Assembly: GCF_006345805.1 (NCBI RefSeq)
Contig: NC_043025.1
Coordinates: 12,214,001 to 12,278,000 of the forward strand
DNA length: 64,000 bases
Reading direction: 5' to 3'
Origin: Octopus sinensis
Taxonomy: Eukaryota
A program made the position numbers and the translations under genes. Positions 830 to 55,161 of the stretch are shown here, one piece after another (position 1 is the first letter of the stretch; the number at the start of each line of letters is the position of its first letter). Below the pieces are notes generated by a model. It was given only the letters and a program-made list of their open reading frames with translations, was not told where the DNA came from and searched no databases.

Positions 830-881
830 TTTGTTATAAACGAATGTTATTGGTGAGGTCTGTTTCTGCTTTATCGCATAG

Positions 882-1030
882 GTTACCATGTCTGTTTTGC
901 GAAGACAAAGAGGCGACCGTCACCTTCCATCCATGCGGACACTGTGTGCTGTGTTTGGAATGCTGTCCAAAACATCTACCAAAGCGATGCCTCAAGTGCC
1001 GGCAACCTGTATCTGGCAGAAGTGGATTTG
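882..1030 (+). CDS. RING-HC exon (149 nt) of the RING-death domain gene
   Basis: Acceptor catag at 880-881 and donor G|GTGAGA at 1031. CxxC...CGH...CxxC...CxxC pattern. Same length and phases as the RING exon at 42688-42836. Confidence 0.88.
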
Positions 1031-4000
1031 GTGAGAATACTATTCAATGATCTGTCTGTTTGTCTCGTTGACTTTGTGGTGTAGAATAATGTACTTTATT
1101 TTGTCGTGTAGATCCTGATCTGTCATAATACTCTTTGTCTCCTACGATTTAGATTCCTAACTACTCCCACATTTTGCGGTGCAGTTTAACCAAAAGCGGG
1201 TATCTTAAAGTCGTGATTCATATCGAGCCCTTCTGGGTATTAGCGTGCGTCTACGATTAGCCTACGATTTTAAAAATAATTTACCATAATTGTTTTCCAT
1301 TTTTTCCATTTCTACGATATAAAAAAAAAAAAAATCATTTTTCCGCATTTTTAATGATTTTTCCTCGGGTTATATAAGGGAAGTAACTCTCTAAAAATGC
1401 TTATATAGATATTTCCCTTACAAACCCGAGCAACGCCGGGCGATACTGCTAGTATTTTATAAAGATAAAGAAATGCTACTTCAAAGCATAAATCTTGGAA
1501 ATATTTATTTCAGATGGTCCAAAGTTGTCTGACAAGGCAGTTCAAACAGTGGCAGAGCCAGATGGTGAGTATAAAATAAGGGTACATAACTATGTTGGCC
1601 CATAGAACTCCAAAAGGAACATAGGGGTGGTTTCCCGGTCCCTCTGGCATACTCTTTTACTCTTTTACTTGTTTCGGTCATTTGACTGCGGCCATGCTGG
1701 AGCACCGCCTTTAGTCGAGCAACTCGACCCCGGGACTTATTCTTTTTTATAAGCCCAGTACTTATTCTATCGGTCTCTTTTGCCGAACCGCTAGGTGGCG
1801 GGGACGTAAACACACCAGCATCGGTTGTCAAGCAATGCTAGTGGGACAAACACAGACACACAAACACACACACATACATATATATGCAACGGGCTTCTTT
1901 TCAGTTTCCGTCTACCAAATCCACGCACAAGGCTTTGGTTGGCCTGAGGCTATAGTAGAAGACACTTGCCCAAGGTGCCACGCAGTGGGACTGAACCCAG
2001 AACCATGTGGTTGGTAAGCAAGCTACTTACCACACAGCCACTCCTGCATATATCATCATCATCATCATCATCATCATCATCGTTTAACGTCCGCTTTCCA
2101 TGCTAGCATGGGTTGGACGGTTCAACTGGATTCTGGGAAGCCAAAGGCTGCACCAAGCCCAGTTTGATCTGGCAACGTTTCTACGGCTGGATGCCCTTCC
2201 TAACGCCAACCACTCCATGAGTGTAGTGGGTGCTTTTTACGTGCCACCGGCACAGTTACGTGTCACCATATATATATATATGACAGGCTTCTTTCAGTTT
2301 CCGTCTAACATATCCACTCACAAGGCTTTGGTCGGCCCGAGGCTATAGTAGAAGATACTTGCCCAAGATGCCACGCGGTGGGACTGAACCCGGAACCATG
2401 TGGTTGGTAAACAAGCTACTTACCACACAGCCACTCCTGCGCCTATATATATTCCTCACTGGATGGGTCACTGGTTCATGGCAGGATTCCCTATTTTCAC
2501 AAGCTGAATGGGCATTGTGAAATATAGTGTTTTTCTCAAGAGCACAATGCATTGCCCAGTCCAGGAATTGAAACCACAGTCTTTAGCCTGACACCCTAAC
2601 CCCTAAAAAGTGCCTCCACTTGTTGTACCTGATTCATCATCATTGTTTAACGTCCGCTTTCCATGCTAGCATGGGTTGGACGATTTGACTGAGGACTGGC
2701 GAACCAGATGGCTGCACCAGGCTCCAATCTTCATTTGGCAGAGTTTCTACAGCCGGATGCCCTTTGTAATGCCAACCGAGAGTGTAGTGGGTGCTTTTTA
2801 CATGCCACCAGCACTGGGCCACTCAGGCGGTACTGTGCCGGTGGCACGTAAAAAGCACCCACTACACTCTCGGAAATCTGTAATATTAGTAAAGACAAAT
2901 TCCACTATAAAACGTAAAATTTAGAAATATTCATTTCAGAGATTCCAAAGCCTGTGAAGAAGCCCCTGAAGAAATCGCAGAGTATAGGTAAGTGTAAAAT
3001 AACAGTAGCTAATTGTTCTCTATAAACTTCACCTGCAGGTGGGGCATAATTTGTTTGTGAGTGGCTTCTGTGCCGGTGGCACATAAAAAGCACCATCCGA
3101 ACGTGGCCAATGCCAGCGCCACCTTGGCTGGCTTCCGTGCCGGTGGCACGTTAAAAGCACCAACCGATCGTTGCTGATGCCAGACCTCCCTGGCACCTGT
3201 GCAGGTAGCACGTAAAAAGCACCCACTACACTCGCGGAGTGGTTGGCGTTAGGAAGGGCATCCAGCTGTAGAAACATGCTAGCATGGGTTGGACGGTTCG
3301 ACCGGGGTCTGGGAAGCCAGGGGCTGCACCAGGCTCCAGTCTGATCTGGCAGTGTTTCTACAGCTGGATGCCCTTCCTAATGCCAACCACTCCGCGAGTG
3401 TAGTGGGTGCTTTTTACGTGCTACCTGCACAGGTGCCAGGGGGATTCGGCATCGGCCACGATCGGTTGGAGCTTTTAATGTGCCACCGGCACGGAAGCCA
3501 GCCAAGGCGGCACTGGCAACGGCCACGTTTGGATGATGCTTTTTATGTGTCACCGGCACAGAAGCCAGTCGAGGTGGTGCTGGCATCGGCCACGTTCGGA
3601 TGGTGCTTTTTGTGCTACCGGCACAGAAGCCAGTAGGGGCGGCGCTGGCAACGGCCACATTCGGATGGTGCTTTTTATGTGCCACCGGCACAGAAGCCAG
3701 TCGAGGCGGCGCTGGCAACGGCCACGTTCAGATGCTGCTTTTTATGTGCCACCGGCACAGGTATCACAACTACTATTTCCATTGATATTTATTGTAAGTA
3801 CTAAAACGTTTTCAGCTACTACACCCTATATGTTTGTCTGTATTTGTATGTCCCCTCTATGTAATGCCTTAATGGCGAATTTTCATAAAATAAAGTAGTT
3901 TGCATCGTCTTGAAATTGGAATTGTTGTAGGCTGCACAATATCGGTCCTTTTGGTTGTGCTTGTTATGGGTTCAAATTCCGCCGAGGTCGACTTTGTCTT

Positions 4001-6528
4001 TCATCCTTTCGTTACGTGGGACCATGATAGAAAGTAAAATGCAGACCAAAACCGTAGTGGTCACCAGTTGACCATTGACGATAGGAATGTCTGACAATAA
4101 TCATCATCATCATCATCATCGTTTAACGTCCGCTTTCCATGCTAGCACGGGTTGGACGGTTCAACTGGGGTCTGGGAAGCCCGAAGGCTGCACCAGGCCA
4201 GTCAGATCTGGCAGTGTTTCTACAGCTGGATGCCCTTCCTAACGCCAACCACTCCGTGAGTGTAGTGGGTACTTTTTATGTGCCACCGACACAGGTGCCA
4301 GACGAGGCTGGCAAACGGCCACGCTCGGATGGTGTTTTTTTTTATGTGCCATGAACACAGGTGCCAGACGAGGTTGGTGAACGGCGACGCTCGGATGGTG
4401 TTTTTTACGTGCCACCGGCATGGAGGCTAGGCGAGGCTGGCAGACGGCCACACTCGGATGGTGTTTTTTATGTCCCACCGACAAAGGTGCCAGACGAGGT
4501 TGGCGAACGGCCACGATCGGATGGTGTTTGTTATGTGCCCACAGCACGGAGGCCAGTCGATGCGGTACTGGCTACGGCCACGTTCGGATGGTCTTCTTAT
4601 GTGCCACCAGCACTGGTACCACAAGAATACAAATTCCATTGATGTTCATCGATTTTGATTTGATTTTTAGATTATTTATAGTGATAGTAAGTCAAATCAA
4701 ATCAAATAGATGAACATCAATGGAATTTGTATCCTTGTGGTACCAGTGCTGGTGGCACATAAGAAAACCATCCGAACGGGACCGTAGTCAGTACCGCATC
4801 GACTGGCCCCGTGCTGTGGGCACGTAACAAACACCATCCGATCGTAGCCGTTCGCCAGCCTCATCTGGCACCTGTGTCGGTGGCACATAAAAAACACCAT
4901 TCGAGCGTGATCGTCTGATAACACCATCCGAGCGTGGCCCTCTGCCAGCCTCATCTGGCACCTGTGTCGGTGGTACATAAAAAACACCATTCGAGCGTGA
5001 CCGTCTGATAACACCATCCGAGCGTGGCTGTCTGCCAGCCTCATCTGGCACCTGTGTCGGTGGCACATAAAAAACACCATTCGAGCGTGACCGTCTGATA
5101 ACACCATCCGAGCGTGGCCGTCTGCCAGCCTCGTCTGGCACCTGTGTCGGTGGCATATAAAATCACCCACTACACTCGCGGAGTGGTTGGCGTTAGGAAG
5201 GGCATCCAGCTGTAGAAACACTGCCAGATCAGACTGGAGCCTGGGGCAGACCCTGGCTCCCCAGACCCGGTCGAACCGTCCAACCCGTGCTAGCGCGGAA
5301 AACAACGTTTAAACGATGATGATGATGATGATGATGATATGGAAATTTTACAATGAATTATAAAACTTTGGAACTATTTATTTCAGAGAGTTCAAACCTG
5401 GAGGAGAATCATCTTCTGAGGGTGGCTAAGAATTTAGGAAGTAACTGGTGGCAAGTGGGTGAGTATACGATACCAGTACCTAATATATTTCTGTGAATTT
5501 TACCTTCACCTGAGATATTTTGTTTATATATATATAAGAAAATATTGTATCATGAATAGTGATTGCGAAACCGGTCGATACATTAAAAATTATACTATAA
5601 CCATGTAAGTGTGCGTATTTTCCGTTTTTATTTTCTTATATAGGTTCCATTCCTAATTTCTAATTGATAGCTTAACTGATTTTATTAAAGAAATTACTGA
5701 AATTTCATGAAATATCCACTGGTTGGTAATCTTTATATATAAAAGAGAAGTTGTGTGTCTGTCTGTCCCCTTCGATTTAGATTCCCAACTACTCCCACAT
5801 TTTGCGGTGCAGTTTAACCAAAACCGGGTATCTTATAGTCGTGATTCATATCGATCCCTTCTGGGTATTAGCACACGTCTACGATTTTAAAAAATTTACC
5901 ATCATTTTTTCCCCATTTTTAATGCATTTTTTTGCTATTATATAAGGGAAGTAACTCTCTAAAAATGCTTATATAGTTATTTCCCTTACAAACCCGAGCA
6001 ACGCCAGGAGATACTGCATGTCTCTATATATAAAAGTAAAGTTGTGTGAGTGTCTGTCTCCTACGATTTAGATTCCTAACTACTCCCACATTTTGCTGTG
6101 CAGTTTAACCAAAACCGGGTATCTTATAGTCGTGATTCATATCGAGCCCTTCTGGGTATTAGCACACGTCTACGATTTAAAAAAAAATTTACCATCAATA
6201 TTTTCCATTTTTAATGCATTTTTGGCATATATAAGGGAAGTAACTCTCTAAAAATGTATTATTAAATCTCAGAACTTTAAAAGCTACAATAACACCCCAC
6301 TTTGTGGTTAGCCATATTGGGATGGCTATTATACTTTACATCTCTAAAAATGCTTATATAGTTATTTCCCTTACAAACCCGAGCAACGCCAGGCAATACT
6401 GCTAGTAATGGATAAACTAGAAGACACAAATAATATTAACTAGCACTATGACCTACAGAAAGGGACACAGAAAACAAGGAGAGAAACAAGGGGAGAAAAA
6501 AATGTGTGTAGTGGCTAACGATCTGCCA

Positions 6529-6559
<31 letters not shown>

Positions 6560-7452
6560 GTAGTAGTAGTAACAGAAAAAAGGAATTTTGGTTGTCCCCA
6601 CGTGGTGGAATGTAACGTATATAAGAAAATAAAAACGGAAAATACGCACACTTACATGGTTATAGTATAATTTTTAATGTATCGACCGGTTTCGCAATCA
6701 CTATTCATGATACAATATTTTCTTATATATATATATATATATATATTTATAAATGAGGGTGAAAAATTGATATTAATTTAATAATACCATTAATTTAACA
6801 CCGAGTGGCTTAGCACAAAAAACTACGGAGAAAATACAAATTTATACATAAATTATTAGAGAGTTAACCACTATGTGGATAACTCTAGTGCTAAAAATAG
6901 CCCCGATAGTATAGCCACAGAAAAAGATGTTTCCAACTAGAAGTAACATACATTTAACGGAAGGAAAGTGAAATATAACGAAATTCATTATATAACTAGA
7001 GTTATCCACATAGTGGTTAACTCTCTAATAATTTATGTATATATATATATATATATATATATACTAGCAGTATCGCCCGGCGTTGCTCGGGTTTGTAAGG
7101 GAAATAACTATAAAGCATTTTTAGAGAGTTATAGCCAAAAAATAGCAAAAAAATGGTTAAAAAAATGATGGTAATTTTTTTTGGATAGTTAAAAAGGTGG
7201 AGTTGCGTCCCCTAGACCATCTGTGGTTTGTGTTTCTGATTGTCGACCCCATGTCGAATTTATCGATCTTTTTCAGAACTGGGGGAACTTTTCAAAATTT
7301 TCGCTGCGTTAGTTTTGAATTATGACATTGGGCTATGTGTGTGTCAAGTTTCATCAGAATCGGTTGAAAGCCGTGGTCAGGGTGAGGGTACAACCAAACA
7401 GACACACAGAAACACACACAGACAAACTGCCGTTTATATAGATATATATATA

Positions 7453-7490
<38 letters not shown>

Positions 7491-7949
7491 CAGGCTTCTT
7501 TCAGTTTCTGTCTACCAAATCCACTCATAAGGCTTTGGTCGGAGTGAGGTTATAGAAGACACTTGTCCAAGGTGCCACGCAGTGGGACTGAACCCGGAAC
7601 CATGTGTGGTTGCGAAGCAGACTACTTGCCACACAGCCACACGTTTCTTTGCTATACATCTTTTGTATCATCGTTAACGTTGTTGCAGTCATTTCTTATT
7701 TTTTTTGTATCTTTTGCAGGTATTTTCTTGGAAATTAAATACAACCAACTGGATATCATCAAGAGTAACAATGTCAACAACACTGAAGAACAGGGCTTCC
7801 AGATGCTTCACAAATGGTTTACGAGCTGTGATCCGGAGAAGCGTACACTCAGAACACTAAGGGACGCTCTTAGAGAAGCTGAGTGTTTTGCTGCACTCCA
7901 GTGTCTACCATCAGACACAGAGCGTGTTTCTGGGATCTTTTCCATTTGA
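882..7949 (+). CDS. 3' portion of a RING-HC + death-domain protein gene (Mind-bomb-related family); 5' exons lie upstream of the window. Exons 882-1030, 1514-1564, 2940-2987, 5387-5458, 7720-7949
   Basis: All introns are GT-AG with compatible phases (entry phase 2, then 1,1,1,1). Spliced product: LPCLFCEDKEATVTFHPCGHCVLCLECCPKHLPKRCLKCRQPVSGRSGF-DGPKLSDKAVQTVAEPD-EIPKPVKKPLKKSQSI-ESSNLEENHLLRVAKNLGSNWWQV-GIFLEIKYNQLDIIKSNNVNNTEEQGFQMLHKWFTSCDPEKRTLRTLRDALREAECFAALQCL...*. Confidence 0.85.
1514..1564 (+). CDS. 51-nt phase 1-1 linker exon
   Basis: tttatttcag|ATGG...GATG|gtgagt; open in the expected frame. Confidence 0.75.
1652..2048 (-). mobile_element. tRNA-derived SINE with a CORE-like block and an internal (TA)n/(TG)n tract. 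Many copies, e.g. 8120-8510(+), 13885-14250(-), 16940-17335(+), 23660-24035(-), 24925-25302(+), 45755-46155(+), 47870-48290(+), 49690-50085(-), 52520-52895(+), 53360-53762(-), 57450-57826(-), 60528-60898(-)
   Basis: Head GCAGGAGTGGCTGTGTGGTAAG (A box) ... GGTTCAGTCCC (B box); CCTTGGGCAAGT block as in the MIR core; AAAGAGT-repeat tail. Boundaries approximate. Confidence 0.85.
2940..2987 (+). CDS. 48-nt phase 1-1 Lys/Pro-rich linker exon
   Basis: tcatttcag|AGATT...ATAG|gtaagt; encodes EIPKPVKKPLKKSQSI. Confidence 0.75.
4100..5338. mobile_element. Two divergent copies (4100-4665 and 4708-5338) of a (GAT)n-tailed non-autonomous retroelement with 64-66-bp internal subrepeats. Other copies at 2063-2262, 3050-3790, 13103-13420, 22885-23190, 41479-42178, 46550-46985, 61430-61755
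   Basis: Conserved GTTGGCGTTAGGAAGGGCATCCAGCTGTAGAAAC...GGACGTTAAACGATGATGAT 3' end; variable copy number of GTGCCGGTGGCACRTAAAAAGCACC units. Confidence 0.8.
5387..5458 (+). CDS. Death-domain exon 1 (72 nt)
   Basis: tatttcag|AGAG...GTGG|gtgagt; LLRVAKNLGSNWWQV matches death-fold helices 1-2 (LxxxAxxLGxxW). Confidence 0.82.
7720..7949 (+). CDS. Death-domain exon 2 (terminal)
   Basis: ttttgcag|GT acceptor; G-LxIxxxxLDxI...EEQxFQMLxxW...TLxxLxxAL death-domain pattern; TGA at 7947-7949. Confidence 0.85.
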
Positions 7950-11597: not shown

Positions 11598-11647
<50 letters not shown>

Positions 11648-11961: not shown

Positions 11962-12003
<42 letters not shown>

Positions 12004-41254: not shown

Positions 41255-41421
41255 TTAACATTTAATAATTATCTTTCTCTCAATTAGTTTCCTACACAAA
41301 TGGCACTGAGTGAGTTGTCCTCCACATTCTTTACAAGTGGTATGGCCACATTCAAATACCATGTTCCATGGACGCTCCATGCATATTGAACACGTGAACT
41401 GGTCTTCCACATGGGACCCAT
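41255..41421 (-). CDS. Terminal RING exon 2 (not reported in the ORF track)
   Basis: atcgtttcag| acceptor at phase 1; [55 protein letters not shown]. Confidence 0.88.
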
Positions 41422-44400
41422 CTGAAACGATAAATACACAGGTTTATATCAGTCTGTAACAGGTAAGATTGATTCATTATCATCATCATCATCATCATCA
41501 TCATCATCGTTTAACGTCCGTTTTCCGCGCTAGCACGGGTTGGACGGTTCGACCGGGGTCTGGGGAGCCAGGGGCTGCCCCAGGCTCCGGTCTGATCTGG
41601 CAGTGTTTCTACGGCTGGATGCCCTTCCTAACGCCAACCACTCCGTGAGTGTAGTGGCGGCTTTTTACGTGCCACCTGCACAGGTGCCAGAGGGGTCTGG
41701 CATCGGTCACGTTCAGATGGTGCTTTTTATGTGCCACCGGCACAGAAGCCATTCGAGGCAGGGTTGGCATCGGTCACGTTCGGATGGTGCTTTTTTATGT
41801 GCCACCGGCACAGAAGCCATTCGAGGCAGGGTTGGCATCAGTCACGTTCGGATGGTGCTTTTTATGTGCCACCGGCACAGAAGCCATTCGAGGCAGGGTT
41901 GGCATCGGTCACGTTCGGATGGTGCTTTTTTATGTGCCACCGGCACAGAAGCCATTCGAGGCAGGGTTGGCATCGGTCACGTTCGGATGGTGCTTTTTAT
42001 GTGCCACCGGCACAGAAGCCATTCGAGGCAGGGTTGGCATCGGTCACGTTCGGATGGTGCTTTTTATGTGCCACCGGCACAGAAGCCAGTGGAGGCTGCA
42101 CTGGCAACGGCCACGTTCGGATGGTGCTTTTTATGTGTCACCGGCACAGGTATCACAACTACTGTTTCCATTGATATTTGGTTAGTAAATAATATTATGA
42201 AATGTCGGAGTCAGCAGTTGTAACGATACGGGTTATGATAAATCCAAAAGTATGCCAAGTAAAGTTTGTGTTTGCGACCTCTTCATTGTTTAGTAGTAAC
42301 TAGCAGTATCGCTCGGCGTTGCTCGGGTTTGTAAGGGAAATAACTATATAAGCATTTTTAGAGAGTTATAGCCAAAAAATAGCAAAAAATGCATTAAAAA
42401 TGGAGAGAAAATGCTGGTAAATTTACGTTCCTAACACTAGTTTAATGATAACTAAGTTATTTTACTAAATTATGACTAAGGTTTGGTGGAATATTTTAAT
42501 TCAAAACTTATGAAAACAAGACATTTTACCACAGAGCCAGAGCTGGTTTTGGCCGGGTTAGTAACAAAAGGGTTAAGCCATACCAAATAAACGAAACACG
42601 TAGATCGCGTTCTAAAGAGGAATTTGACTCTTGTAGAACACGCTGGCAATGTAGATTGCATACAAAAGTAGCGCCATGTATTCTTACCACGTCCAGATTT
42701 TTTGGTTATCCTTAGTCGACACTCAGGACAACTTCTAAGCGGAACTTTTGAACAACATGTCTCACAGATCAAAGTATGGCCGCAGGGATGGAATTCTACT
42801 ATGGGATGGTTAATTTCACAAAACATACACAGCAATCTATGGAAGAAAAAGCAAAAGAAAAACACAGCCCATCAATAACAGTTATCGTCCATTTATAACA
42901 AATATTACATTGAGTATATTGTTGTATTTAGGAATGGTCATTTTGCCATTTTAGCCAATAAGAAACACATGCACGATATATTTGGTGTTACTTTGCTTCA
43001 GTGTTATTTATTTTTACATTAATCTTAATCTTATTTCGGCCAGAGTTCTTTCGTCACACTCCTGTAACCTCATCAGTGGTCCTTTGCTTTTTTCTTTCTT
43101 ATTTCTGTGTCTCTCCTTACTAACAGTCAGCCATTATTATTAATATCAGGAAGTCAATATTAGAAAATTCTTCAGAAAGATATATACGTGTGTAGAAAAA
43201 CCTGGGTTTTTAGTAATATATATTTTATAATATATTATTATTGTTGTTGTATTTAGGAATGGTCATTTTGCTAGTTTAGCCAATAAAAACACATGCAACT
43301 ATATATTTGGTGTTATTTTGCTTCAGTGTTACTTATTTTTTGCATTAATCTTAATCTTATTTCAGCCAGAGTTCTTTCGTCACACTCCTGTGACCTCATC
43401 AGTGGTCCTTTGCTTTCTTCTTTCTTATTTGTGTCTCTCCTTACTAACAGTCAGCGCAAATGAAGACGTACAATAGAAATACAAAATGGCTGACGGTTAG
43501 TAAGGAGAGACACACAAATAAGAAAGAAGAAAACAAAGGACCACTGATGCGGTCACACGCCTGTGACGAAAGAACTCTAGGCGAAATAAGATTAAGATTA
43601 ATGTAAAAAATAAATAACACTGAAGCAAAATAACACCAAATATATAGTGCGTGTGTTTTTTATTGGCTAAACTGGCAAAATGACCATTCCGAAATATAAC
43701 AATATCTGTTTCAACACACGACTTCACATAAAAAAATCTTGCACAACAAATATATAAACGTACATTGAGTATACATTTACAGAAAATGAAATACTAAAGT
43801 ATCTGAAATGTAATGGAAAATTGGTCAGTTTGAAAACATTGATGTCCGGGTGATAAAAGCAAAGTGTGAAGGGAATGGTAGTCACTTCCTTTGATTTCTA
43901 GACAGAATCCAATAAGAAATGACACTCACTGACCAAAGACAACAAGCAAATCTCTGGTATTGGACAGAATATTTGTTATAATGATATTTCTGCTTCAGCA
44001 ACTCTGTGCTGAATCTGTGTGAAATGTAATGGAAAATTGGTCAGTTTTGAAACATTGTCTGGGTGATAAAAGCAAAGTTTGAAGGGAATACTGGTCATTC
44101 CTTTCATTTCTAAGTAGAAGCAAATAGGAGATAACACTTGCTGACCAAAGACAACAAGCAAATCTGTGGTATTGGACAGAATATTTGCTATAACAATATT
44201 TCTACGTCAGCAACTCAGAGCTGGATTTGTTTGAAACGTAATGGAAAATAGGTCAGTTTCAAAGCATTGATGTCCGGGTGATAAAAGCAATGTTAAAAGC
44301 AATCCACCCTTAGGGGTTAGCCACACTTAAGTGGCAAATATACTTCACGATGTCATGCTGCTACTGTTTATACTTCGCTCAGAGATTTATTATTGCTTGT

Positions 44401-47400
44401 TTACACTTCTTTGATATCAGTGATTTTTCATCACTGGAAAAAGGATATATATTTGTAGAGGAAGGCCTACTTTTCATCGACAACCAGTGATTGTCACACG
44501 CTGATGACGGGTCAATACCAAGAAACTCGAGTCCATGTGTATCATAGGTTGAAGACAGGATGGCTTCCCTTTGCAAATACTGATAGGGCACAGAAAGTGT
44601 GTCAATAGCCAGCTGGAGGAGGTGTCCTCCTGGGGCTACAAGCTACAGTAGCATCCACCCTTAGGGGTTAGCCACGTTTAAGTGGCAAATATACTTCACG
44701 ATGTCATGCTGCTACTGTTTATACTTCGCTCAGAGATTTATTATTGCTTGTTAACACTTTTGATATCAGTGATTTTTCATCACTGGAAAAAGGATATATA
44801 TTTGTAGAGGAAGGCCTACTTTTCATCGACAACCAGTGATTGTCACACGCTGATGACGGGTCAATACCAAGAAACTCGAGTCCATGTGTATCATAGGTTG
44901 AAGACAGGATGGCTTCCCTTTGCAAATACTGATAGGGCACAGAAAGTGTGTCAATAGCCAGCTGGAGGAGGTGTCCTCCTGGGGCTACAAGCTACAGTAG
45001 CATCCACCCTTAGGGGTTAGCCACGTTTAAGTGGCAAATATACTTCACGATGTCGTGCAGCTACTGTTTATACCTCGCTCAGAGATTTATTATTGCTTGT
45101 TAACACTTTCGATATCAGTGATTTTTCATCACTGGAAAAAGGATATATATTTGTAGAGGAAGGCCTACTTTTCATCGACAACCAGTGATTGTCACACGCT
45201 GATGACGAGTCAATACCCAGAAACTCGAGTCCATGTGTATCATAGGCTGAAGACGGGAAGGATGGCTTCCCTTTGTAAATACTGATAGGGCACAGAAAGT
45301 GTGTCAATAGCCAGCTGGAGGAGGTGTCCTCCTGGGGCTACAAGCTACAGTAGCATCCACTCTTAGGGGTTAGCCACGTTTAAGTGGCAAATATACTTCA
45401 GATAATATAAACATGATTATGTACAAAATAGAAAATGAACTGGTTGATCTTGTCCATTATCAGCAAATACTTACGGCGGGGTGAAAATTGTTTTTATTTT
45501 TTCTCTCAGATCTGGGTTCGTAATACGGTCCAGTGGGACTTCGTTCTTGGTATTTTGGTGGTAAAAGTTAGCTCCATGATGAGCTAAATAATACGCGACT
45601 GCTATTCCGGAAAGCCTGTCATTCTCGTTCAAAGACAGTTTAGTGCAGCCCTACAAATGAAGAAACATATAAAGAGGAGAACAATACTACAGAAACAGGC
45701 GTTAGGCGTTATATATGCCCCAAATTACACAAAAGTTAAACTACATCTACACAGCGCAGGAGTGGCTGTGTGGTAAGTAGCTTGTTTACCAACCACATGG
45801 TTCCGGGTTCAGTCCCACTGCGTGGCACCTTGGGCAAGTGTCTTCTGCTATAGCCCTGGGCCGACCAATGCCTTGTGAGTGGATTTGGTAGACGGAAACT
45901 GAAAGAAGCCTGTCGTATATATGTATATATATATATATGTGTGTGTGTGTTTGTGTGTCTGTGTTTGTCCCACTAGCATTGCTTGACAACCGATGCTGGT
46001 GTGTTTACGTCCCCGTCACTTAGCGGTTCGGCAAAAGAGACCGATAGAATAAGTACTAGGCTTACAAAGAATAAGTCCCGGAGTCGATTTGCTCGACTAA
46101 AAGGCGGTGCTCCAGCATGGCCGCAGTCAAATGACTGAAACAAGTAAAAGAGTAAAGAGTATAGGCACAGGCGTGGCTGTGTGGTAAGAAACTTGCTTCC
46201 CAACCACATGGTTCCAGGTTCAGTCTCACTGTGTGGCACCTTGGGCAAGTGTCTTCTACTGTAACCTCGGGCCAACCAAAACTTTCTGAGTGAATTTGGT
46301 AGAAGGAAACTGAAAGAAGCTTGTCATATGTATGTGTATGCATGTACTTGTGTGTGTGTGTGTGTATATCACTTATTTTAGTGCTGTTGACACTGCTGGA
46401 TTGAGTGGTACTGCCCACCAGGAGTTGAAACCATAATGATATCCATGGGGCAGCTGATGATGGACGTATGTTGGATTGTTGGTATGGCTGGTTTTGTATA
46501 TGTGGAATAGTATTTTAACACATCCTTTTGGTATATATATATATATATAGAAATCAAAATCAAAATCGATCAACATCAATGGAAATTGCAGCTGTGATAC
46601 CAGTGTCGGTGGTAAGTAAGAGAACTATCCGAATGTGGTCGTTGCCAGCACCACCCCGACTGGCCTTGTGCTGGTGGCACGTAAAAAGCACCATCTGATC
46701 GTGGCCGTTGCCAGCCTCATCTGGCCCCCGTGCCGGTGGCACGTAAAAAAAGCACCATCCGATCGTGGCCGTTTGCCAGCCTCGTCTGGCACCTGTGCCG
46801 GTGGCACGTAAAAAGCACCCACTACACTCACGGAGTGGTTGGCGTTAAGAAGGGCATCCAGCCGTAGAAACATTGCCAGATCAGACTGGGCCTGGTGCAG
46901 CCTTCTGGCTTCCCAGACCCCAGTTGAACCGTTCAACCCATGCTAGCATGGAAAGCGGACGCTAAACGAAGATGATGATGATGATGATATATATATAACT
47001 ATAAGACATGACTGTCTCTCTGTCCATCTCTCCCTCATATTCACAAGCAATTTTAAAACTTACCTCATCTAAAATTTCCAAGGACTCATCCGCAGAACGG
47101 AACATCTCCTTCTCCAGGGCAAGATGCAGGCAGTTGTTATCATCAGCATCAACGGTGTTTATATCTGCTTCATGGTCAATCAACATATGAATGATTCCGA
47201 GGTGGCCCTCGGAGACAGCCAAAAGAAACGGGGTTCTCTGGTTGTGGTTCTTGACATCCAAATTCACTCGATCCTTTGTGGAGACAAAAAAGGGAAAACG
47301 ATAATTTACATAAAAATTAGGGTGGATATTTGCCACTACACTCTTCTACTGGGTATTTGATTAACTTGATCACATGCGTTTAAGGTTTGTCGGTGAAGTC

Positions 47401-48079: not shown

Positions 48080-48623
48080 TTGTATGTCTGTGTTTGTCCC
48101 CCTAGCATTGCTTGACAACCGATGCTAGTGTGTTTACGTCCCCGTCTCTTAGCGGTTCAGTCGGCAATAGAGACCGATAGCATAAGTACTGGGCTTACAA
48201 AAAAGAATAAGTCCCGGGGGTTGAGTTGCTCGATGAAAGGCGGTGCTCCAGCATGGCCGCAGTCAAATGACTGAAACAAGTAGAAGAGTATACATTAACT
48301 TACCTGCAACAGTATCGCTACCACCACATTAGGACATTGCCTGAAAGTTACAGAAAGTGGAAAGGAAAATTTGAGAAATGAAAAAAATCACAGAAAGAGA
48401 GTTAATTAATAATTAGGACACTATAATATAATTACATCAATAATTATATAGACACACATGCAGGAGTGGCTGTGTGGTAAGTAGCTTGCTTACCAACCAC
48501 ACTGTTCTGGGTTCAATCCCACTGCGTGGCACCTTGGGCAAGTGTCTTCTACTATAGCCTCAGGCCAACCAAAGCATTGTGAGTAGATTTGGTAGACGGA
48601 AACTGAAAGAAGCCCGTCGTATA

Positions 48624-49069: not shown

Positions 49070-51760
49070 GCAGGAGTGGCTGTGTGGTAAGTAGTTTGCT
49101 TACCAACCACATGGTTCTAGGTTCAGTCCCACTGTGTGGCACCTTGGTTAAGTGTCTTCTACTATAGCCTCGGGCCGACCAAAGCCTTGTGAGTGGATTT
49201 GGTAGACGGAAACTGAAAGAAGCCCGTCGTATATGTGTGTATATATATATATATATATGCAGGAGTGGCTGTGTGGTAAGTAGCTTGCTTACCAACCACA
49301 TGGATCTGGGTTCAGTCCTACTGTGTGGAACTTTGGGCAAGTGTCTTCTACTATAGCCTCAGGCTGACCAAAGCCTTGTGAGTGGATTTGGTAGATGGAA
49401 ACTGAAAGAAGCCCGTCGTATATATGTATGTGTGTGTGTGTGTATGTCCCCACCACTCATCACCACCACCATTTGGTAATTGGTAGATAAGTAGTGCTGT
49501 CACCATAGTAACTAAGTTTTGATTTAAAACGATAAGGATTTTAAGTGCAAGTCTGTCAACACAACACAAACTTCATAAACAAAGTCAGTTGTTTTTGGTT
49601 TATTTGTGTGTGTGTTTCTGTGTCTTTCAACTTGTAAGCAACACAGACTTTACAACAAAGACTTTCATTGTGAACAATTTACGAAGGTATACTCTTTTAC
49701 TCTTTTACTTGTTTCAGTCATTTGACTGCAGCCATGCTGGAGCACCGCCTTTAATCGAGCAACTCGACCCCGGGACTTATTCTTTTGTAAGCCCAGTACT
49801 TATTCTATCAGTCTCTTTTGCCGAACCGCTAAGTAATGGGGACACAAACACACCAGCATCGGTTGTCAAGCAATGCTAGGGGGACAAACACAGACACACA
49901 CACATATATATATACATATATATGACAGGCTTCTTTCAGTTTCCATCTACCAAATCCACTCACAAGGCATTGGTCGGCCCGAGACTATAGCAGAAGACAC
50001 TTGCCCAAGGTGCCACGCAGTGGGACTGACCCCGGAACCATGTGGTTGGTAAGCAAGCTACTTACCACACAGCCACTCTTGCGCCTGTATGTGCATGATT
50101 AACAATTATTTTTATTGGCAACGTAGCAACGAGCAGTGACCTAGTAATTAAATAAAAGCAAACACTATGAAAAATATAATAGAAAGGAATTTGGATATTC
50201 CAGATCATTGTTGACCTACCCTCGGACTGCATCATGGAGAGGTGTTCCGCCATTTACATTGTTCACTACATTCACATCAGCTCCAGCTCCTAGGAGACAG
50301 TAAACGATATCCGTCTGTCCTCCGTAACAGGCCAAATGTAGAGGTGTGTGACCATTAGTATCTCTCTTATTGACATCAGCTCTAGCGTCCACTAACAGTT
50401 TAACAATATCTGCGTATACACCACCACAGGACAGGTGTAGAGGTGTGTTGCCAAGATTATCACCGGTGTTGACATCAGCCCTGGATGTCAATAACAGACG
50501 AACAATATCTGTATATCCACCGTCACAGGCCAGATGTAGAGGTGTGCAACCATGTTCGTTTCGTTGATTGACCTGGAGAAAAAAATAAAGGTTCTAGTAG
50601 AGAGGTGGGTACATCATCATCATTTAACGTCCGTCGTCCATACCGGCATGGGTTGGATAGTTTGACTGGGCTGGCACGTTATTTCTGTATTGAATCAATT
50701 TCAGAATCAATCCCATGGATTTTTTCCTCTTCAGTAGAAAATACGATAAGAAATAAATGAAATATTTACATGCACCCATGGAAAAAAAAAACGAAGCAAA
50801 AGTCATGAGTACATATAAGTACCCCAGATATATCTAAATATAAGATCCATACATACACACACACACACATATATATATATAAACATATGCACATATGTTC
50901 ATACACATTTATACACACATATATGTATCCACTGGATGCGAGACCTGGACACTAAAGAAAGCTGACCAGAAGAGAATTAATGCATTCGAGCTTTGGTGTT
51001 GGAGAAGACTTTTACGGATTCCATGGACAGCGAGGCTCACCAATGGAGAAGTTCTTAAGCAGATCAGGCCGAAAATGTTGCTAGAAGCTAGGATCACCAA
51101 GCATAGATTGGCATATTTTGGTCATATTATTTGGAGAAAATCCCTGGAGAAGGACATCATGCTTGGAATGGTCAGTGGCAAGAGAGGAAGAGACCGACCA
51201 AGAACCTGCTGGCTTGACACCATCAAGATTGATACCGGAATGGACACAGCCAATCTGAAAGAAACGGCCCAGGATTGAACTGACTGGAGGACACTGATCC
51301 AACGAGTGACTGAGAGTCGACTTCGACTGAGCGGATAGATAGATAGATATATATATGTGTGTATATATATATGTGTATATATATATGGACACTAAAGAAA
51401 GCTGACCAGAAGAGAATTAATGCATTTGAGCTTTGGTGTTGGAGAAGACTTTTACAGATTCCATGAAAAGCGAGGCTCACCAATGGAGAAGTTCTTAACC
51501 AGATCGAGCCGAAACTGTCGCTGGAAGCTGGGATCACCAAGCATAGATTGGCATATTTTGGCCATATTATGCGGAGAAAATCCCTGGAGAAGGACATCAT
51601 GCTCGGAATGGTCAGTGGCAAGAGAGGAAGAGGCCGACCAAGAACCTGCTGGCTTGACACCATCAAGAGTGATACCGGAATGGATATAGCCAATCTGAAA
51701 GAAGCGGCCCAGGATAGAACTGACTGGAGGACACTGATCCATCGAGTAACCGACTGAGCG

Positions 51761-51791
<31 letters not shown>

Positions 51792-54294
51792 GGATAGATG
51801 GATGGATGGATGGATGGATAAATAAATAGAGAGTGGTAGACAGACAGATAGATAGACGGATAGATAGATAGATGGATAGATAGATAGATAGATAGATGGA
51901 TAGATAGATAGATGGATAGATAGATAGATGGATGTATAGATAGATGGATGGATGGATGGATAAATAAATAGAGAGTGGTAGACAGACAGATAGATAGACG
52001 GATAGATAGATAGATGGATAGATAGATAGATAGATGGATAGATAGATAGATGGATAGATAGATAGATGGATGTATAGATAGATGGATGGATGGATGGATG
52101 GATGGATAGACAGACAGACAGACGGATGGATGGATAGATAGATAGATAGATAGATAGATATAGATAGACGGATAGATAGATAGACGGATAGATAGATAGA
52201 TAGATATCAACTGACCCTTATGGTATGTCTCCCTCCTGTCATGAGTAAAGCTTCCATTATATCTTGAGAGACCTTCTTCTTTAGAGCCAGATGGAGAGGG
52301 TTGTTGCCTTGGACATCCTGAATGTTGACATCGGCTCCCTTGGAGAGCATGAGGGCCACAACATCACATCGCTGTCTGGAAATGAAAAAAAATATAAACA
52401 TTACAGGCACTGACACGATTTCATTAAATTATACGCTCATGTTCAACATACGGTGCCCCAGCATGGCCACAGCTCATGAGCTGAAACTAGATAAAATATA
52501 AAAATATATAAAAAACACAGGAGTGGCTGTGTAGTAAGTAGCTTGCTAACCAACCACATGGTTCGGGGTTCAGTCCCACTCTGTGGCATCTTGGGCAAGT
52601 GTCTTCTACTATAGCCCCGGGTTGACCAATGCCTTGTGAGTGGATTTGGTAGACGGAAACTGAAAGAAACCTGTCGTATATATGTATATATATATATGTA
52701 TGCGTGTGTGTGTTTGTCCCCCTAGCATTGCTTGACAACTGATGCTGGTGTGTTTACGTCCCCGTCACTTAGCGGTTCAGCAAAAAGAGACCGATAGAAT
52801 AAGTACTGGGCTTACAAAGAATAAGTCCCGGGGTTGATCTGCTTGACTAAAGGCAGTGCTCCAGCATAGCCGCAGTCAAATGACTGAAACAAGTAACAAA
52901 GAAAAAAAGAAAAAGAATATACAAGAATTAAGTGTATAACAATGTCTATGTACCCGGATCTTTTCGGTCTGACCGGCAGTTTTTTAAAATAATTTCTACG
53001 TAACTAAACACTTTTAAAATTTCGTATACTGGTAGAATGTGTTTATAAAACACATTGCTCCATTTTACTCAGCCTTCGAAAGGAGTTGCAATGTCACAGG
53101 TGCCAGGCTGTATCAGCCCCTTTGCCTTTCCGTTGGATAACATCAGTGGCATGGAGAGGAGAAACAGGTATGCATAGACGACTGCAGGTCTTCCATAGAC
53201 AACCTTGCCTGGACCTGAGCTTCAGAAGGGAACTTTCTAGGTGCAACCCCATGGTCATTCATGACCAAAGGAGGTCTTTACCCTATGTACATATAAGGGG
53301 GTCTTTTCCCTATGTACATATAAGGGCATGGATAAAGGGAGCTGGTATGCGTGGGTGACTCTTTACTCTTTTACTTGTTTCAGTCATTTGACTGCAGCCA
53401 TGCTGGAGCACCGCCTTTAGTCGAGCAAATCGACCCCGGGACTTATTCTTTGTAAGCCCAGTACTTATTCTATCGGTTCTCTTTTGCCGAACCGCAAAGT
53501 GACGGGGACGTAAACACACAAGCATCGGTTGTCAAGCAATGCTAGGGGGACAAACACACACACACAAACACATATACACACATATATATATATACATATA
53601 TACGACAGGCTTCTTTCAGTTTCCGTCTACCAAATCCACTCACAAGGCATTGGTCGGCCCGGGGCTATAGCAGAAGACACTTGCCCAAGATGCCACGCAG
53701 TGGGACTGAACCCGGAACCATGTGGTTGGTTAGCAAGCTACTTACCACACAGCCACTCCTGCTGGTCTTCCATAAACAACCTTGCCCAGATTTGCACCTC
53801 AGAGGGGAACTTTCTGGGTACAATCCAATGGTCAAATGGTCATTCAAAACTGAAGGATGGTTTTATTGTAGGGTAGGTACAAGAGGCTGAATCGGGCAGT
53901 TTGACCCTAAAACAAAGTACAATATTTGGGCCAGGTACGGCCAGTTTAAATGCTGAAGAGTTAATTCCAAACTTACCCGATCACAGCATAATGTAAAGCT
54001 GTATTATGGAATCGGTCACTTATGTCCAAATTGGCGCCAGCACCTATGAACATGTTGACTAGACGTGTGTCACCCAGTCGACAAGCAACCATCAGGCTAG
54101 TCAGACCCCATGAATTCTTTTGGTTAATCTGAAAGAAAGAAAGTGAAGGCATGTGAAATATATCAAAGGAGAGACAGAGAAGAGAGTGAAGAACATTTGT
54201 GGATGAGAAGAGAGGGATACAAAAGAGGAACAAACACACATACTATTTTGCTTCTGTCTTCCATGCTATATATTATATATATATATATATATAT

Positions 54295-54542: not shown

Positions 54543-55161
54543 TATACATACACACTCACACACACACATATATATATATATATTATACATACACACATAT
54601 ACATATATACGACGGGCTTCTTTCAGTTTCCGTCTACCAAATCTACTCACAAGGCTTTGGTCGTCCCAAGGCTATAGCAGAAGACACTTGTCCAAGGTGC
54701 CATGCAGTGGGACTGAACCCGGAACCATGTGGTTGATTAGCAAGCTACTTACCACACAGCCACTCCTGCGCCTTATATATATATATACATATATACGACA
54801 GACTTCTTTCAGTTTCCGTCTACAAAATCCACTCGCAAGGCTTTGGTTGGCCCGAGTCTATAGCAGAAGGCACTTGCCCAAGGTGCCATGCAGTGGGACT
54901 GAACCCGGAACCATGTGGTTGATTAGCAAGCTACTTACCACACAGCCACTCCTGCGCCTATATCAAAATTTTATCTTACCTTGTTCCAGACACCATAGCA
55001 ACAAAGACAAATCATTTTACCAAATATTAAATAATAAACCAAAAGTCAAGTTTGAGGAGACAATTAAAAGAACTTACCTGATTAGGGTTAGTGTTAATGA
55101 ATTTCTCAAAATAAGAAATATCACTTTGCATCGTTTTGCTTATGCTCCGATTTGCTTCCAT
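41255..55161 (-). CDS. Mind-bomb-like E3 ligase: ~9-10 ankyrin repeats + RING + RING, 495 aa. Coding exons 55161-55078, 54128-53977, 52375-52216, 50572-50220, 48340-48304, 47273-47064, 45650-45475, 42836-42688, 41421-41255
   Basis: ATG in GCCATGG context. All nine exons have AG/GT boundaries with compatible phases (0,2,0,2,0,0,2,1); total 1488 nt. Ankyrin periodicity continues across junctions ([41 protein letters not shown]). Terminal [45 protein letters not shown] resembles the MIB C-terminal RING. Confidence 0.88.
42688..42836 (-). CDS. RING-HC exon 1 (149 nt)
   Basis: [28 protein letters not shown]...CPECR; ccatag| acceptor and G|GTAAGA donor. Confidence 0.9.
42921..43703. repeat. ~210-bp repeat, two direct copies (42921-43132, 43246-43455) plus one inverted copy (43487-43703), each with a hammerhead-like core (Penelope pLTR-like)
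   Basis: On the - strand of copies 1-2: CTGATGA-G-GT(C/T)ACA-GGAG-TGTGAC-GAAA-G-AA-C-TC. Copy 3 on +: CTGATGC-G-GTCACA-CGCC-TGTGAC-GAAA. Confidence 0.75.
43805..44300. repeat. ~214-bp tandem repeat, ~2.3 units
   Basis: GAAA(T/C)GTAATGGAAAAT recurs at 43805, 44021 and 44233. Confidence 0.85.
44481..44551 (+). ncRNA. Type I hammerhead ribozyme motif, copy 1 of the 349-bp array
   Basis: CTGATGA 44501-44507, stem II GGT/ACC with CAAT loop, GAAAC-TCGA-GTC 44522-44533. Extended stem I: CACACG/CATGTG, TGAT/ATCA, CAACC/GGTTG. Confidence 0.8.
44830..44900 (+). ncRNA. Type I hammerhead motif, copy 2
   Basis: Identical core at +349 nt (CTGATGA 44850, GTC 44880-44882). Confidence 0.8.
45179..45249 (+). 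ncRNA. Type I hammerhead motif, copy 3
   Basis: CTGATGA 45199, CGAGT-CAAT-ACCCA, GAAAC-TCGA-GTC ending at 45231. Confidence 0.78.
45475..45650 (-). CDS. Last, degenerate ankyrin exon (GCTKLSL...[23 protein letters not shown]...)
   Basis: catttgtag| acceptor, CC|GTAAGT donor; phase 0 to 2 matches both neighbours. Confidence 0.82.
47064..47273 (-). CDS. Ankyrin exon (DRVNLDVKN...LEILDE)
   Basis: cacaaag| acceptor, GAG|GTAAGT donor, 70 codons. Confidence 0.88.
48304..48340 (-). CDS. 37-nt ankyrin micro-exon ([12 protein letters not shown])
   Basis: actttcag| ... CAG|GTAAGT; supplies the required phase 2 to phase 0 bridge. Confidence 0.8.
48458..49425 (+). repeat. Tandem array of 5 SINE 5'-halves joined by (TA)n
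   Basis: GCAGGAGTGGCTGTGTGG head recurs at ~48460, 48669, 48876, 49070 and 49259. Confidence 0.85.
50220..50572 (-). CDS. Ankyrin exon (3.5 repeats, TPLHLAC motifs)
   Basis: ctccag| acceptor, GG|GTAGGT donor, 353 nt. Confidence 0.92.
50925..51765 (+). mobile_element. Two tandem RTE (BovB-like) LINE 3' fragments; (GATA/GGAT)n tail expanded to 52205
   Basis: [32 protein letters not shown]...YFGHI.R...LEKDIMLG...RGR.RPR..WLD signature. Confidence 0.92.
52216..52375 (-). CDS. Ankyrin exon ([31 protein letters not shown]...)
   Basis: atttccag| acceptor at phase 2. Donor AGG|GTCAGT at phase 0 is non-consensus but phase-compatible. Confidence 0.8.
53977..54128 (-). CDS. Ankyrin exon ([16 protein letters not shown]...TALHYAVIG)
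   Basis: ctttcag| acceptor, GG|GTAAGT donor, ankyrin consensus. Confidence 0.88.
54329..54384 (+). ncRNA. Isolated type I hammerhead-like motif between (TA)n tracts
   Basis: CTGATGA 54342-54348, CG-GCAA-CG, GAAAC-TCAGA-GTA. Stem I CTGT/ACAG plus CAGCAAAA/TTTTGTTG. Confidence 0.6.

What the first reader, a model, noticed from the sequence alone, without database searches (positions are those of the whole stretch)
882..7949. Convergent paralog pair with swapped C-termini: RING-death domain versus RING-RING
Seen: the RING exons at 882-1030 (+) and 42836-42688 (-) are both 149 nt, both enter at phase 2 and exit at phase 1, and share the CxFC...FHPCGH..xC..CC...C..CR..x..xSG pattern. Gene 1 continues into two phase-1 micro-exons and a death domain; the - strand gene continues into a MIB-type second RING. 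Known: Mind bomb has ankyrins plus RINGs and no death domain; death domains mediate TNFR/TLR/PIDD-type signalling. Inference: exon shuffling at the conserved phase-1 intron produced an ankyrin-RING-DD E3 ligase, a plausible lineage-specific immune or cell-death adaptor.
Basis: partly seen in the sequence, partly recalled or inferred. Interest (0 to 1): 0.7.

Follow-up and report, generated by a model that had tools for sequence, protein, structure and literature searches.

The report
Octopus ankyrin-RING-death domain gene family
Two neighbouring Octopus sinensis genes descended from the Mind bomb ubiquitin ligase share eight exons but end differently, one in a second RING finger and one in a RIPK1-like death domain. 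The death-domain form is a real, conserved gene family found here only in Octopus, labelled only 'MIB2-like' in databases and apparently undescribed.

Summary
The window is Octopus sinensis CM016887.1:12,214,001-12,278,000.

Gene 1 (+) is RefSeq XP_029653038.1, 'MIB2-like isoform X2', 508 aa. Its last five exons (882-1030, 1514-1564, 2940-2987, 5387-5458, 7720-7949) encode a RING, a disordered two-micro-exon tether and a death domain. Its upstream exons, outside the window, encode ankyrin repeats.

The minus-strand gene is XP_029652975.1, 495 aa: ankyrin repeats, RING, RING.

Neither gene is a true Mind bomb. Both lack the MIB/HERC2, ZZ and SH3 modules. Their first eight exons match in length and phase and diverge only after the phase-1 intron that follows the RING exon.

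Ankyrin-RING-death domain is a multigene family in O. sinensis, O. vulgaris and O. bimaculoides. I found it in no other genus. The death domain is closest to that of RIPK1, by sequence profile and by fold. RING and death domain are under purifying selection (dN/dS 0.07 and 0.17).

Two cautions:
- The retained RING is the homologue of MIB2's first RING, which human MIB2 does not need to ubiquitylate cFLIP. Ligase activity is therefore unproven.
- Any role in immunity or cell death is inference.

I found no paper describing the family.

The parts
882..1030 (+). Gene 1 exon 8: RING finger (zf-C3HC4_3), the homologue of MIB2's first RING. Entered in phase 2, left in phase 1.
   Evidence: dN/dS 0.07 against the O. 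bimaculoides ortholog
1514..1564 (+). Gene 1 exon 9: 51-nt phase 1-1 micro-exon (DGPKLSDKAVQTVAEPD). First half of the disordered tether.
   Evidence: pLDDT below 50 in the full-length model
2940..2987 (+). Gene 1 exon 10: 48-nt phase 1-1 cassette micro-exon. Skipped in RefSeq isoform X3. Isoform X1 uses an acceptor 15 nt upstream (exon start 2925).
5387..5458 (+). Gene 1 exon 11: 72-nt phase 1-1 exon encoding death-domain helix 1 (…LEENHLLRVAKNLGSNWWQVG).
7720..7949 (+). Gene 1 exon 12: death-domain helices 2-6 and the stop codon (TGA, 7947-7949).
55078..55161 (-). Minus-strand gene exon 1 (ATG at 55161). Family-type N-terminus; no MIB/HERC2 module upstream.
53977..54128 (-). Minus-strand gene exon 2 (ankyrin).
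52216..52375 (-). Minus-strand gene exon 3 (ankyrin).
50220..50572 (-). Minus-strand gene exon 4 (ankyrin). It is 198 nt, or two repeats, longer than gene 1's exon 4.
48304..48340 (-). Minus-strand gene exon 5: 37-nt micro-exon.
47064..47273 (-). Minus-strand gene exon 6 (last ankyrin repeats).
45475..45650 (-). Minus-strand gene exon 7 (ankyrin-to-RING linker helices).
42688..42836 (-). Minus-strand gene exon 8: RING1, the 149-nt paralog of gene 1's RING exon, with the same phases.
41255..41421 (-). Minus-strand gene exon 9: Mind-bomb-type terminal RING2 plus stop. Entered in phase 1.

Best explanation
Shown: Gene 1 and the minus-strand gene belong to a family of short Mind-bomb-2-derived proteins that I found only in Octopus. 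The family kept MIB2's ankyrin array and first RING and lost its N-terminal substrate-binding modules. One form ends in the ancestral terminal RING2 exon. The other has, in its place, a two-exon RIPK1-like death-domain cassette, reached through one or more small phase-1/phase-1 exons that encode a disordered tether.

Shown: All junctions after the RING exon are in phase 1. Modules can therefore be exchanged, duplicated or skipped without breaking the reading frame.

Inferred mechanism: The death domain docks the protein, through homotypic death-domain contacts, onto oligomeric signalling platforms. Candidate partners are other octopus death-domain proteins, such as the 'RIPK1-like' death-domain-only proteins or the adhesion receptor (annotated 'G-protein coupled receptor 126-like') that carries the same death-domain subtype. 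This brings the ankyrin-RING unit to the platform, where it either ubiquitylates components or acts as a scaffold. It would hard-wire the MIB2-RIPK1 relationship known from mammalian TNF signalling.

Inferred: The variable, alternatively spliced tether sets the reach between the two ends.
For: Identity and gene models:
- My exon chains equal RefSeq proteins exactly.
- Three RefSeq isoforms differ only in how micro-exon 2940-2987 is used.

Architecture:
- Pfam on the 508-aa protein gives ankyrin, zf-C3HC4_3 (327-370) and Death (417-488), with no MIB_HERC2, ZZ or SH3_15. The real octopus MIB2 (P0186) has all three.
- The full-length AlphaFold model shows ankyrin repeats (pLDDT 80-98), a RING (62-72), a tether at 376-411 (24-43) and a death domain (74-89).

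Paralogy:
- Exon lengths and phases agree over eight exons.
- In a 45-sequence tree rooted on P0186, the canonical MIB2 of O. bimaculoides, all short family members fall on the other side of the root.

Death domain:
- The family profile hits the RIPK1 death domain best (E = 3e-15), followed by ankyrin-G/B, PIDD, CRADD and FADD.
- The model has six helices and pLDDT 85.9. Its top Foldseek matches are the RIPK1 death-domain filament and crystal structures (TM about 0.7, rmsd 2.0-2.1 Å).

Constraint:
- dN/dS against the O. bimaculoides ortholog is 0.07 for the RING, 0.17 for the death domain and 0.49 for the tether, with dS about 0.42.
- Seven RING cysteines are invariant across 15 family members.

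Family size and range:
- 70 fetched proteins, forming 29 groups at 95% identity or less, have ankyrin linker, RING and death domain. Every one I traced is O. sinensis, O. vulgaris or O. bimaculoides.

Cassette origin:
- A death-domain-only octopus gene (P0212) splits its death domain at the same residue and phase.

Mammalian link:
- MIB2 binds and ubiquitylates RIPK1 and limits death-domain-mediated RIPK1-FADD assembly (PMC7815719).
Against: - I could not inspect any RNA-seq reads or cDNA. The link from RING to death domain rests on RefSeq and other annotation models plus frame compatibility.
- The retained RING matches MIB2's first RING. In human MIB2 a first-RING mutant still ubiquitylates cFLIP, while a second-RING mutant does not. 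The protein may therefore have little or no ligase activity of its own.
- No expression, interaction or functional data exist for any family member. The binding partner of the death domain is unknown.
- Death domains also serve non-immune roles, for example in ankyrins, UNC5 and p75NTR (established knowledge).
- The direction and number of module exchanges are unresolved. The core tree interleaves the two C-terminus types, while the death-domain tree is nearly monophyletic.
Confidence: 0.6

Rival explanations
1. Ligase-dead scaffold or decoy. With the catalytic terminal RING gone, the ankyrin-RING-death domain protein does not ubiquitylate anything. Instead it caps, seeds or sequesters death-domain oligomers, or holds ankyrin-bound cargo at them. 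The remaining RING is kept as a structural or pairing surface, for example to pair with RING-RING paralogs.
For: - In human MIB2 the second RING is required and the first is dispensable for cFLIP ubiquitylation.
- Gene 1 has no trace of a second RING in its introns or downstream sequence.
- RING-RING paralogs are encoded close by, on the same chromosome.
Against: - The RING exon is the most constrained part of the C-terminus (dN/dS 0.07). All zinc ligands are kept, and so is the arginine after the last cysteine.
- Such constraint fits an active RING equally well.
- No assay has been done.
Confidence: 0.28
2. Non-immune role. The family works in neural or developmental signalling, as Mind bomb does in Notch ligand endocytosis. 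The death domain acts as a general protein-protein module, as it does in ankyrins, UNC5 and p75NTR.
For: - The second-best structural and sequence matches are ankyrin death domains.
- The same death-domain subtype ends an octopus adhesion receptor (annotated 'G-protein coupled receptor 126-like').
- Known octopus gene-family expansions are often neural (established knowledge).
Against: - The best match is the RIPK1 death domain.
- The N-terminal modules that bind Notch ligands in Mind bomb are missing.
- No expression data point either way.
Confidence: 0.1
3. Annotation chimera. The RING exon and the death-domain exons belong to different transcripts, and automated prediction joined them.
For: I examined no transcript reads directly. 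A few database models in the family are clearly truncated or oddly joined.
Against: - The same chain is predicted at about 29 distinct loci in three species, by at least two annotation efforts.
- Frames are compatible at every junction, with canonical splice sites.
- Exon order and sequence are conserved in O. bimaculoides.
- RefSeq lists three isoforms that differ only within the chain.
- No alternative start or upstream exon for a stand-alone death-domain gene is evident.
Confidence: 0.04

Closest known systems
Mind bomb 2 (MIB2 / skeletrophin) E3 ubiquitin ligase
   Same: The ankyrin array, the helical linker and the first RING are homologous: 35% identity to octopus MIB2 over about 336 residues, running into the 'G-x-D-G-S/P' that starts the next exon. 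The minus-strand gene also keeps MIB2's terminal RING.
   Different: Both window genes lack the two MIB/HERC2 domains, the ZZ finger and the Mind bomb SH3 repeats. Gene 1 also lacks the terminal RING that human MIB2 needs for activity, and has a death domain instead.
RIPK1 death domain
   Same: Best hit of the family's death-domain profile (E = 3e-15) and best fold match (TM about 0.7). In mammals MIB2 acts on RIPK1.
   Different: No kinase domain or RHIM. About 25% identity. Whether it forms filaments or binds FADD/TRADD-type partners is unknown.
Molluscan IAPs with BIR-death fold-RING architecture (oyster BIRC2/3-like, 'BIRC11')
   Same: A zf-C3HC4_3-class RING and a death-fold domain in one lineage-expanded molluscan protein (PMC8917759).
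   Different: The order is reversed there (death fold before the RING), the targeting module is BIR rather than ankyrin, and the RING is C-terminal.
Ankyrin-plus-death-domain proteins (ankyrins 1-3, ANKDD1A/B, DAPK1, NF-kB p100/p105)
   Same: Ankyrin repeats and a C-terminal death domain on one chain. Ankyrin death domains are the second-best matches. The other names come from established knowledge.
   Different: None has a RING between the two. Ankyrins have ZU5-UPA, DAPK1 has kinase/ROC-COR and NF-kB has a Rel domain. None of these occur here.

Membership tests
Mind bomb (MIB1/MIB2) E3 ligases | N-terminal MIB/HERC2 - ZZ - MIB/HERC2 substrate-binding module | tested here: not met
   Pfam finds none in P0195 (gene 1) or in the minus-strand gene. 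Octopus MIB2 (P0186) scores 168.8 bits for MIB_HERC2 and 35.5 for ZZ.
Mind bomb (MIB1/MIB2) E3 ligases | Mind bomb SH3 (REP) repeats | tested here: not met
   PF18346 is absent from both window proteins and present in P0186 (167.6 bits).
Mind bomb (MIB1/MIB2) E3 ligases | Ankyrin array followed by a zf-C3HC4_3 RING homologous to MIB2's | tested here: met
   BLASTP of P0195 against P0186: 35% identity, E = 7e-55, across ankyrin repeats and RING1. Pfam agrees.
Mind bomb (MIB1/MIB2) E3 ligases | C-terminal-most RING at the very end of the protein | tested here: not met
   Gene 1 has no RING2 in any frame of 1031-12000 (HMM search). The minus-strand gene does meet this feature (113.7 bits at 41258-41443).
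Death domain (Pfam PF00531, DD subfamily of the death fold) | Profile match above the curated threshold | tested here: met
   34.0 bits (spliced C-terminus) and 32.9 bits (P0195) against a cut-off of 22.6.
Death domain (Pfam PF00531, DD subfamily of the death fold) | Six-helix bundle fold | tested here: met
   AlphaFold2 model with pLDDT 85.9 and six main helices. The top 40 or so Foldseek PDB matches are all death domains.
Death domain (Pfam PF00531, DD subfamily of the death fold) | Homotypic oligomerisation with other death domains | not testable with these tools
   Needs binding or assembly assays.
RIPK1 | N-terminal kinase domain and RHIM | tested here: not met
   No kinase match in P0195. 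Only the death domain resembles RIPK1.
RING-type E3 ligase (functional) | Complete C3HC4 zinc-ligand set | tested here: met
   CLFC…PCGH…C..C…C..C read directly from the sequence. Seven cysteines are invariant in 15 family members.
RING-type E3 ligase (functional) | E2 binding and ubiquitin transfer | not testable with these tools
   Doubtful a priori. The homologous first RING of human MIB2 is dispensable for cFLIP ubiquitylation.
IAP (BIR-containing) ligases | At least one BIR domain | tested here: not met
   No BIR match.

The most novel reading that the evidence does not exclude
Octopuses evolved their own class of death-domain-recruited ubiquitin regulators. They took the ankyrin-RING core of MIB2 and fused it to a RIPK1-type death domain, then expanded the result into a clustered, alternatively spliced family whose 3' modules (RING2 or death domain) are exchanged among paralogs. 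This would be a natural 'Rosetta stone' fusion of the MIB2-RIPK1 axis that controls TNF-induced cell death in mammals. It would also mark a lineage-specific cell-death or innate-immune pathway in a motile mollusc, a group thought to have few such expansions.
Probability: 0.3. Interest if true: 0.6.

Novelty: new variant of a known kind. Interest (0 to 1): 0.45.

Why it matters
Death-domain signalling outside vertebrates and flies is mostly known from gene counts. This is a concrete, well-delimited family with a clean exon-level history:
- a known ligase core,
- a captured death-domain cassette,
- a tether built from small frame-neutral exons.

It gives a testable entry point into cephalopod cell-death or innate-immune signalling. 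It is also a natural experiment on what MIB2's first RING can do alone.

Practically, dozens of RefSeq and UniProt entries named 'MIB2', 'MIB1-like', 'ankyrin-3-like' or 'RIPK1' in Octopus are mislabelled. Automated orthology or pathway analyses would be misled by those names.

It is not a surprise in kind. Invertebrate genomes are rich in lineage-specific death-domain architectures.

Tried and rejected
1. Relic modules. I looked for a leftover RING2 in gene 1's introns and 3' flank, and for a leftover death domain 3' of the minus-strand gene. I ran family HMMs over all six frames with filters off. Only the annotated exons scored.

2. Micro-exon 1514-1564 as a truncated 5' end of the ancestral RING2 exon. 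Both begin D-G-S/P. Only three or four residues support this, so it is kept as a possibility only.

3. The micro-exons and the first death-domain exon as tandem duplicates.
- Ungapped flank identity looked striking: 60-75% against about 38% background.
- With gapped alignment the background rises to 57 ± 5%. The trio scores 70-73% upstream and 60-70% downstream.
- This is suggestive, not proven. Tandem micro-exon repeats are obvious in paralogs such as P0009.

4. A single clean split between RING2-bearing and death-domain-bearing genes. The AU test rejects it on the core tree (p = 0.003). However, I named the groups after seeing the tree, the basal nodes are unresolved, and the death-domain tree is nearly monophyletic. 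The history stays open.

5. A look-up of isoform X2 by exact sequence failed. Isoform X1 worked and gave the upstream exons.

6. Literature searches for MIB2, death domain and octopus or cephalopod found no description of the family. The cuttlefish genome paper does not mention it.

7. Pseudogene. Rejected by the intact ORFs and the low dN/dS.
Full report
**What is in the sequence**

Reading 1-8400 and translating the proposed exons gives one open frame across five exons with canonical AG/GT boundaries:
- 882-1030 (149 nt)
- 1514-1564 (51 nt)
- 2940-2987 (48 nt)
- 5387-5458 (72 nt)
- 7720-7949 (230 nt, including the TGA stop)

The 182-residue product scores above Pfam's curated thresholds for a zf-C3HC4_3 RING (residues 2-44, 34.4 bits) and a Death domain (residues 91-162, 34.0 bits).

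On the minus strand, 42836-42688 is also 149 nt. It is entered two bases into a codon and left one base into a codon. It encodes a RING that is 21/49 identical to the first. The next exon, 41421-41255, carries a second RING and the stop codon.

The only corrections are one-base shifts at the micro-exon ends.

**Identity of the locus**

I rebuilt the whole minus-strand gene from tblastn hits and splice sites: nine exons and 495 codons. It is 100% identical to XP_029652975.1, 'E3 ubiquitin-protein ligase MIB2 [Octopus sinensis]'.

The 182-residue C-terminus of gene 1 is 100% identical, over its full length, to XP_029653038.1, 'MIB2-like isoform X2', 508 aa.

Fetching the locus of isoform X1 places the window at O. 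sinensis GCA_006345805.1, CM016887.1:12,214,001-12,278,000. The overlap is identical. It also supplies gene 1's seven upstream exons, which encode ankyrin repeats.

RefSeq lists three isoforms. They differ only in micro-exon 2940-2987: X1 uses an acceptor 15 nt upstream, and X3 skips the exon.

**The two genes are paralogs that differ only at the 3' end**

| Gene | Exon lengths (nt) |
|---|---|
| Gene 1 | 84, 155, 160, 155, 37, 210, 176, 149, then 51, 48, 72, 230 |
| Minus-strand gene | 84, 152, 160, 353, 37, 210, 176, 149, then 167 |

The phases are identical. The 198-nt difference in exon 4 equals two ankyrin repeats. Protein identity is 36% overall and markedly higher across the last ankyrin repeats, linker and RING.

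Neither gene is a Mind bomb proper. Pfam finds ankyrin repeats and RING(s) but no MIB/HERC2, ZZ or Mind bomb SH3 domains. The genuine octopus MIB2 (P0186, 822 aa) has all of them.

Homology to MIB2 runs through the ankyrin array and the first RING, and into the first residues of the following exon. Gene 1's RING is thus the counterpart of MIB2's first RING.

**A family, not a one-off**

A full HMMER pass over 1.84 billion representative proteins found 160 hits. Eleven had E < 1e-30 and 43 had E < 1e-10.

Among all proteins fetched, 70 carry the ankyrin linker, RING and death domain, forming 29 groups at 95% identity or less. None carries both RING2 and a death domain.

Every member whose source I traced is O. 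sinensis, O. vulgaris or O. bimaculoides. Non-octopus hits match only the death domain, in unrelated proteins from fish, annelids and echinoderms. One Argonauta protein has the same death-domain subtype.

Members cluster on the same chromosomes, for example five on O. sinensis CM016887.1 and three on O. bimaculoides CM046630.1.

Coverage of other cephalopod proteomes in the database is unknown. 'Octopus-specific' therefore means 'not seen elsewhere here'.

**The death domain**

A profile of 30 octopus death domains hits the RIPK1 death domain best among solved structures (E = 3e-15). Ankyrin-G/B, PIDD, CRADD, FADD and TNFR1 follow.

An AlphaFold2 model (pLDDT 85.9) is a six-helix bundle. Its best Foldseek matches are RIPK1 death-domain structures (TM about 0.7, rmsd about 2 Å), followed by ankyrin-G and RAIDD.

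In the full-length model the ankyrin solenoid is confident and the RING moderate. Residues 376-411, which correspond to the two micro-exons, are disordered. The death domain is a separate folded unit.

**Evidence for exon-level module exchange**

- Every exon after the RING is phase 1/phase 1 and a multiple of three in length, and both kinds of terminal exon are entered in phase 1.
- A death-domain-only gene of O. bimaculoides (P0212, annotated 'RIPK1') splits its death domain at the same place (…W-x-x-V-G|) and in the same phase. Its helix-1 exon is 75 nt, against 72 nt here.
- The same death-domain subtype also ends an adhesion receptor annotated 'G-protein coupled receptor 126-like'.
- Paralogs carry from zero to five tandem copies of the 16-17-residue micro-exon unit.
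- In this gene, the two micro-exons and the helix-1 exon have similar flanking intron sequence. This is about 3 SD above background upstream and weaker downstream. It hints that the tether arose by tandem duplication of the first death-domain exon.

On a tree of the shared core, rooted on canonical MIB2, RING2-bearing and death-domain-bearing genes are interleaved. An AU test rejects a clean split (p = 0.003). The death domains themselves are almost monophyletic.

Together this suggests one capture of the cassette followed by 3'-end exchange among clustered paralogs. The basal nodes are unresolved and I do not regard the history as settled.

No relic of the alternative module remains in either gene.

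**Is it functional?**

Orthologous exons exist in the same order in O. bimaculoides. Against them:

| Region | dN/dS |
|---|---|
| RING | 0.07 |
| Death domain | 0.17 |
| Tether | 0.49 |

dS is about 0.42. The zinc-ligand cysteines are invariant across the family. Both folded modules are therefore maintained by selection.

**How it probably works, and what is not shown**

- Shown: the architecture, its conservation, the RIPK1-like nature of the death domain and the frame-neutral modular gene structure.
- Inferred: the death domain recruits the ankyrin-RING unit to death-domain oligomers, where it modifies or scaffolds components.

The inference is attractive because mammalian MIB2 binds and ubiquitylates RIPK1 and restrains death-domain-mediated RIPK1-FADD assembly (PMC7815719).

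The same paper shows that MIB2's second RING is the one needed to ubiquitylate cFLIP, while a first-RING mutant stays active. Gene 1 keeps only the first-RING homologue. A ligase-dead scaffold or decoy is therefore a serious rival.

I had no access to expression or transcript reads. An immune, cell-death or neural role cannot be decided here.

**Comparison with what is known, and novelty**

The closest relatives by descent are MIB2 (ankyrin repeats and RING1) and RIPK1-type death domains.

The closest analogues by architecture are:
- molluscan IAPs with BIR-death fold-RING (PMC8917759);
- ankyrin-plus-death-domain proteins such as ankyrins, ANKDD1, DAPK1 and NF-kB precursors (established knowledge).

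None has ankyrin-RING-death domain in this order.

Searches of the held literature found no description of the family. One comparative study notes that cephalopods have very few or no TRADD-N domains, whereas sessile or densely aggregating marine invertebrates carry lineage-specific expansions of them (PMC8195603).

The gene models themselves are public, under misleading names. I rate this a new variant of a known kind. It is of moderate interest, mainly as a clean example of exon-level domain grafting and as an entry point to cephalopod death-domain signalling.

Noticed in passing
window 30100-40852; also 41660-42149, 3059-3223, 3406-3760, 4268-5093: A 66-bp minisatellite of about 163 copies (10.7 kb) starts about 400 bp 3' of the minus-strand gene's stop. 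Shorter arrays of the same repeat family sit in that gene's last intron (between the RING1 and RING2 exons) and in gene 1's intron between micro-exon 3 and the first death-domain exon. These are the introns where the two genes' C-terminal modules differ. Whether the repeat promotes ectopic exchange is unknown.
   Followed up: partly
window 18442-20472 (+): An intact single-exon ORF of 676 aa, made of tandem C2H2 zinc fingers (HTGEKPY linkers), lies between the two convergent genes. It is presumably one of the many octopus C2H2 genes.
   Followed up: no
window 12374-12473: A run of 100 N, i.e. an assembly gap.
   Followed up: no
window 17443-17940 (+), 62318-62623 (-), 58725-59407 (-): ORF fragments resembling the C-terminal part of LINE-type reverse transcriptases. 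There are also many copies of SINE-like elements and a repeated ~200-bp element (…cccttacaaacccgagcaacgccgggcgatactgctagt…) flanking gene 1's exons.
   Followed up: no
P0004, P0005, P0007, P0021, P0051 (Octopus paralogs and isoforms): Several annotated products join the RING exon directly to the last death-domain exon and skip the helix-1 exon. That would give a five-helix, probably incomplete, death domain. The frame allows it, but I could not tell real isoforms from annotation errors.
   Followed up: no
L006 (O. bimaculoides CM046626.1:18,972,813-18,983,077); P0037/P0180: The same octopus death-domain subtype occurs in a 302-aa death-domain-only protein annotated 'RIPK1' that has no kinase, and at the C-terminus of a protein annotated 'G-protein coupled receptor 126-like' with LRR-like N-terminal repeats. 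The death-domain-only gene shares the intron position inside the domain.
   Followed up: partly
P0056 (574 aa, Octopus family member): A family member whose sequence after the RING keeps a recognisable but degenerate helix-1 exon (…LEAKCLQVRVEKSKCEWQQVG) and then runs into unrelated sequence. It may be a decaying death-domain copy or a mis-modelled 3' end.
   Followed up: no
P0189 (O. sinensis paralog on the same chromosome): The RING histidine ligand is replaced by aspartate (…LQPCGDLVLC…), while all the cysteines are kept.
   Followed up: no
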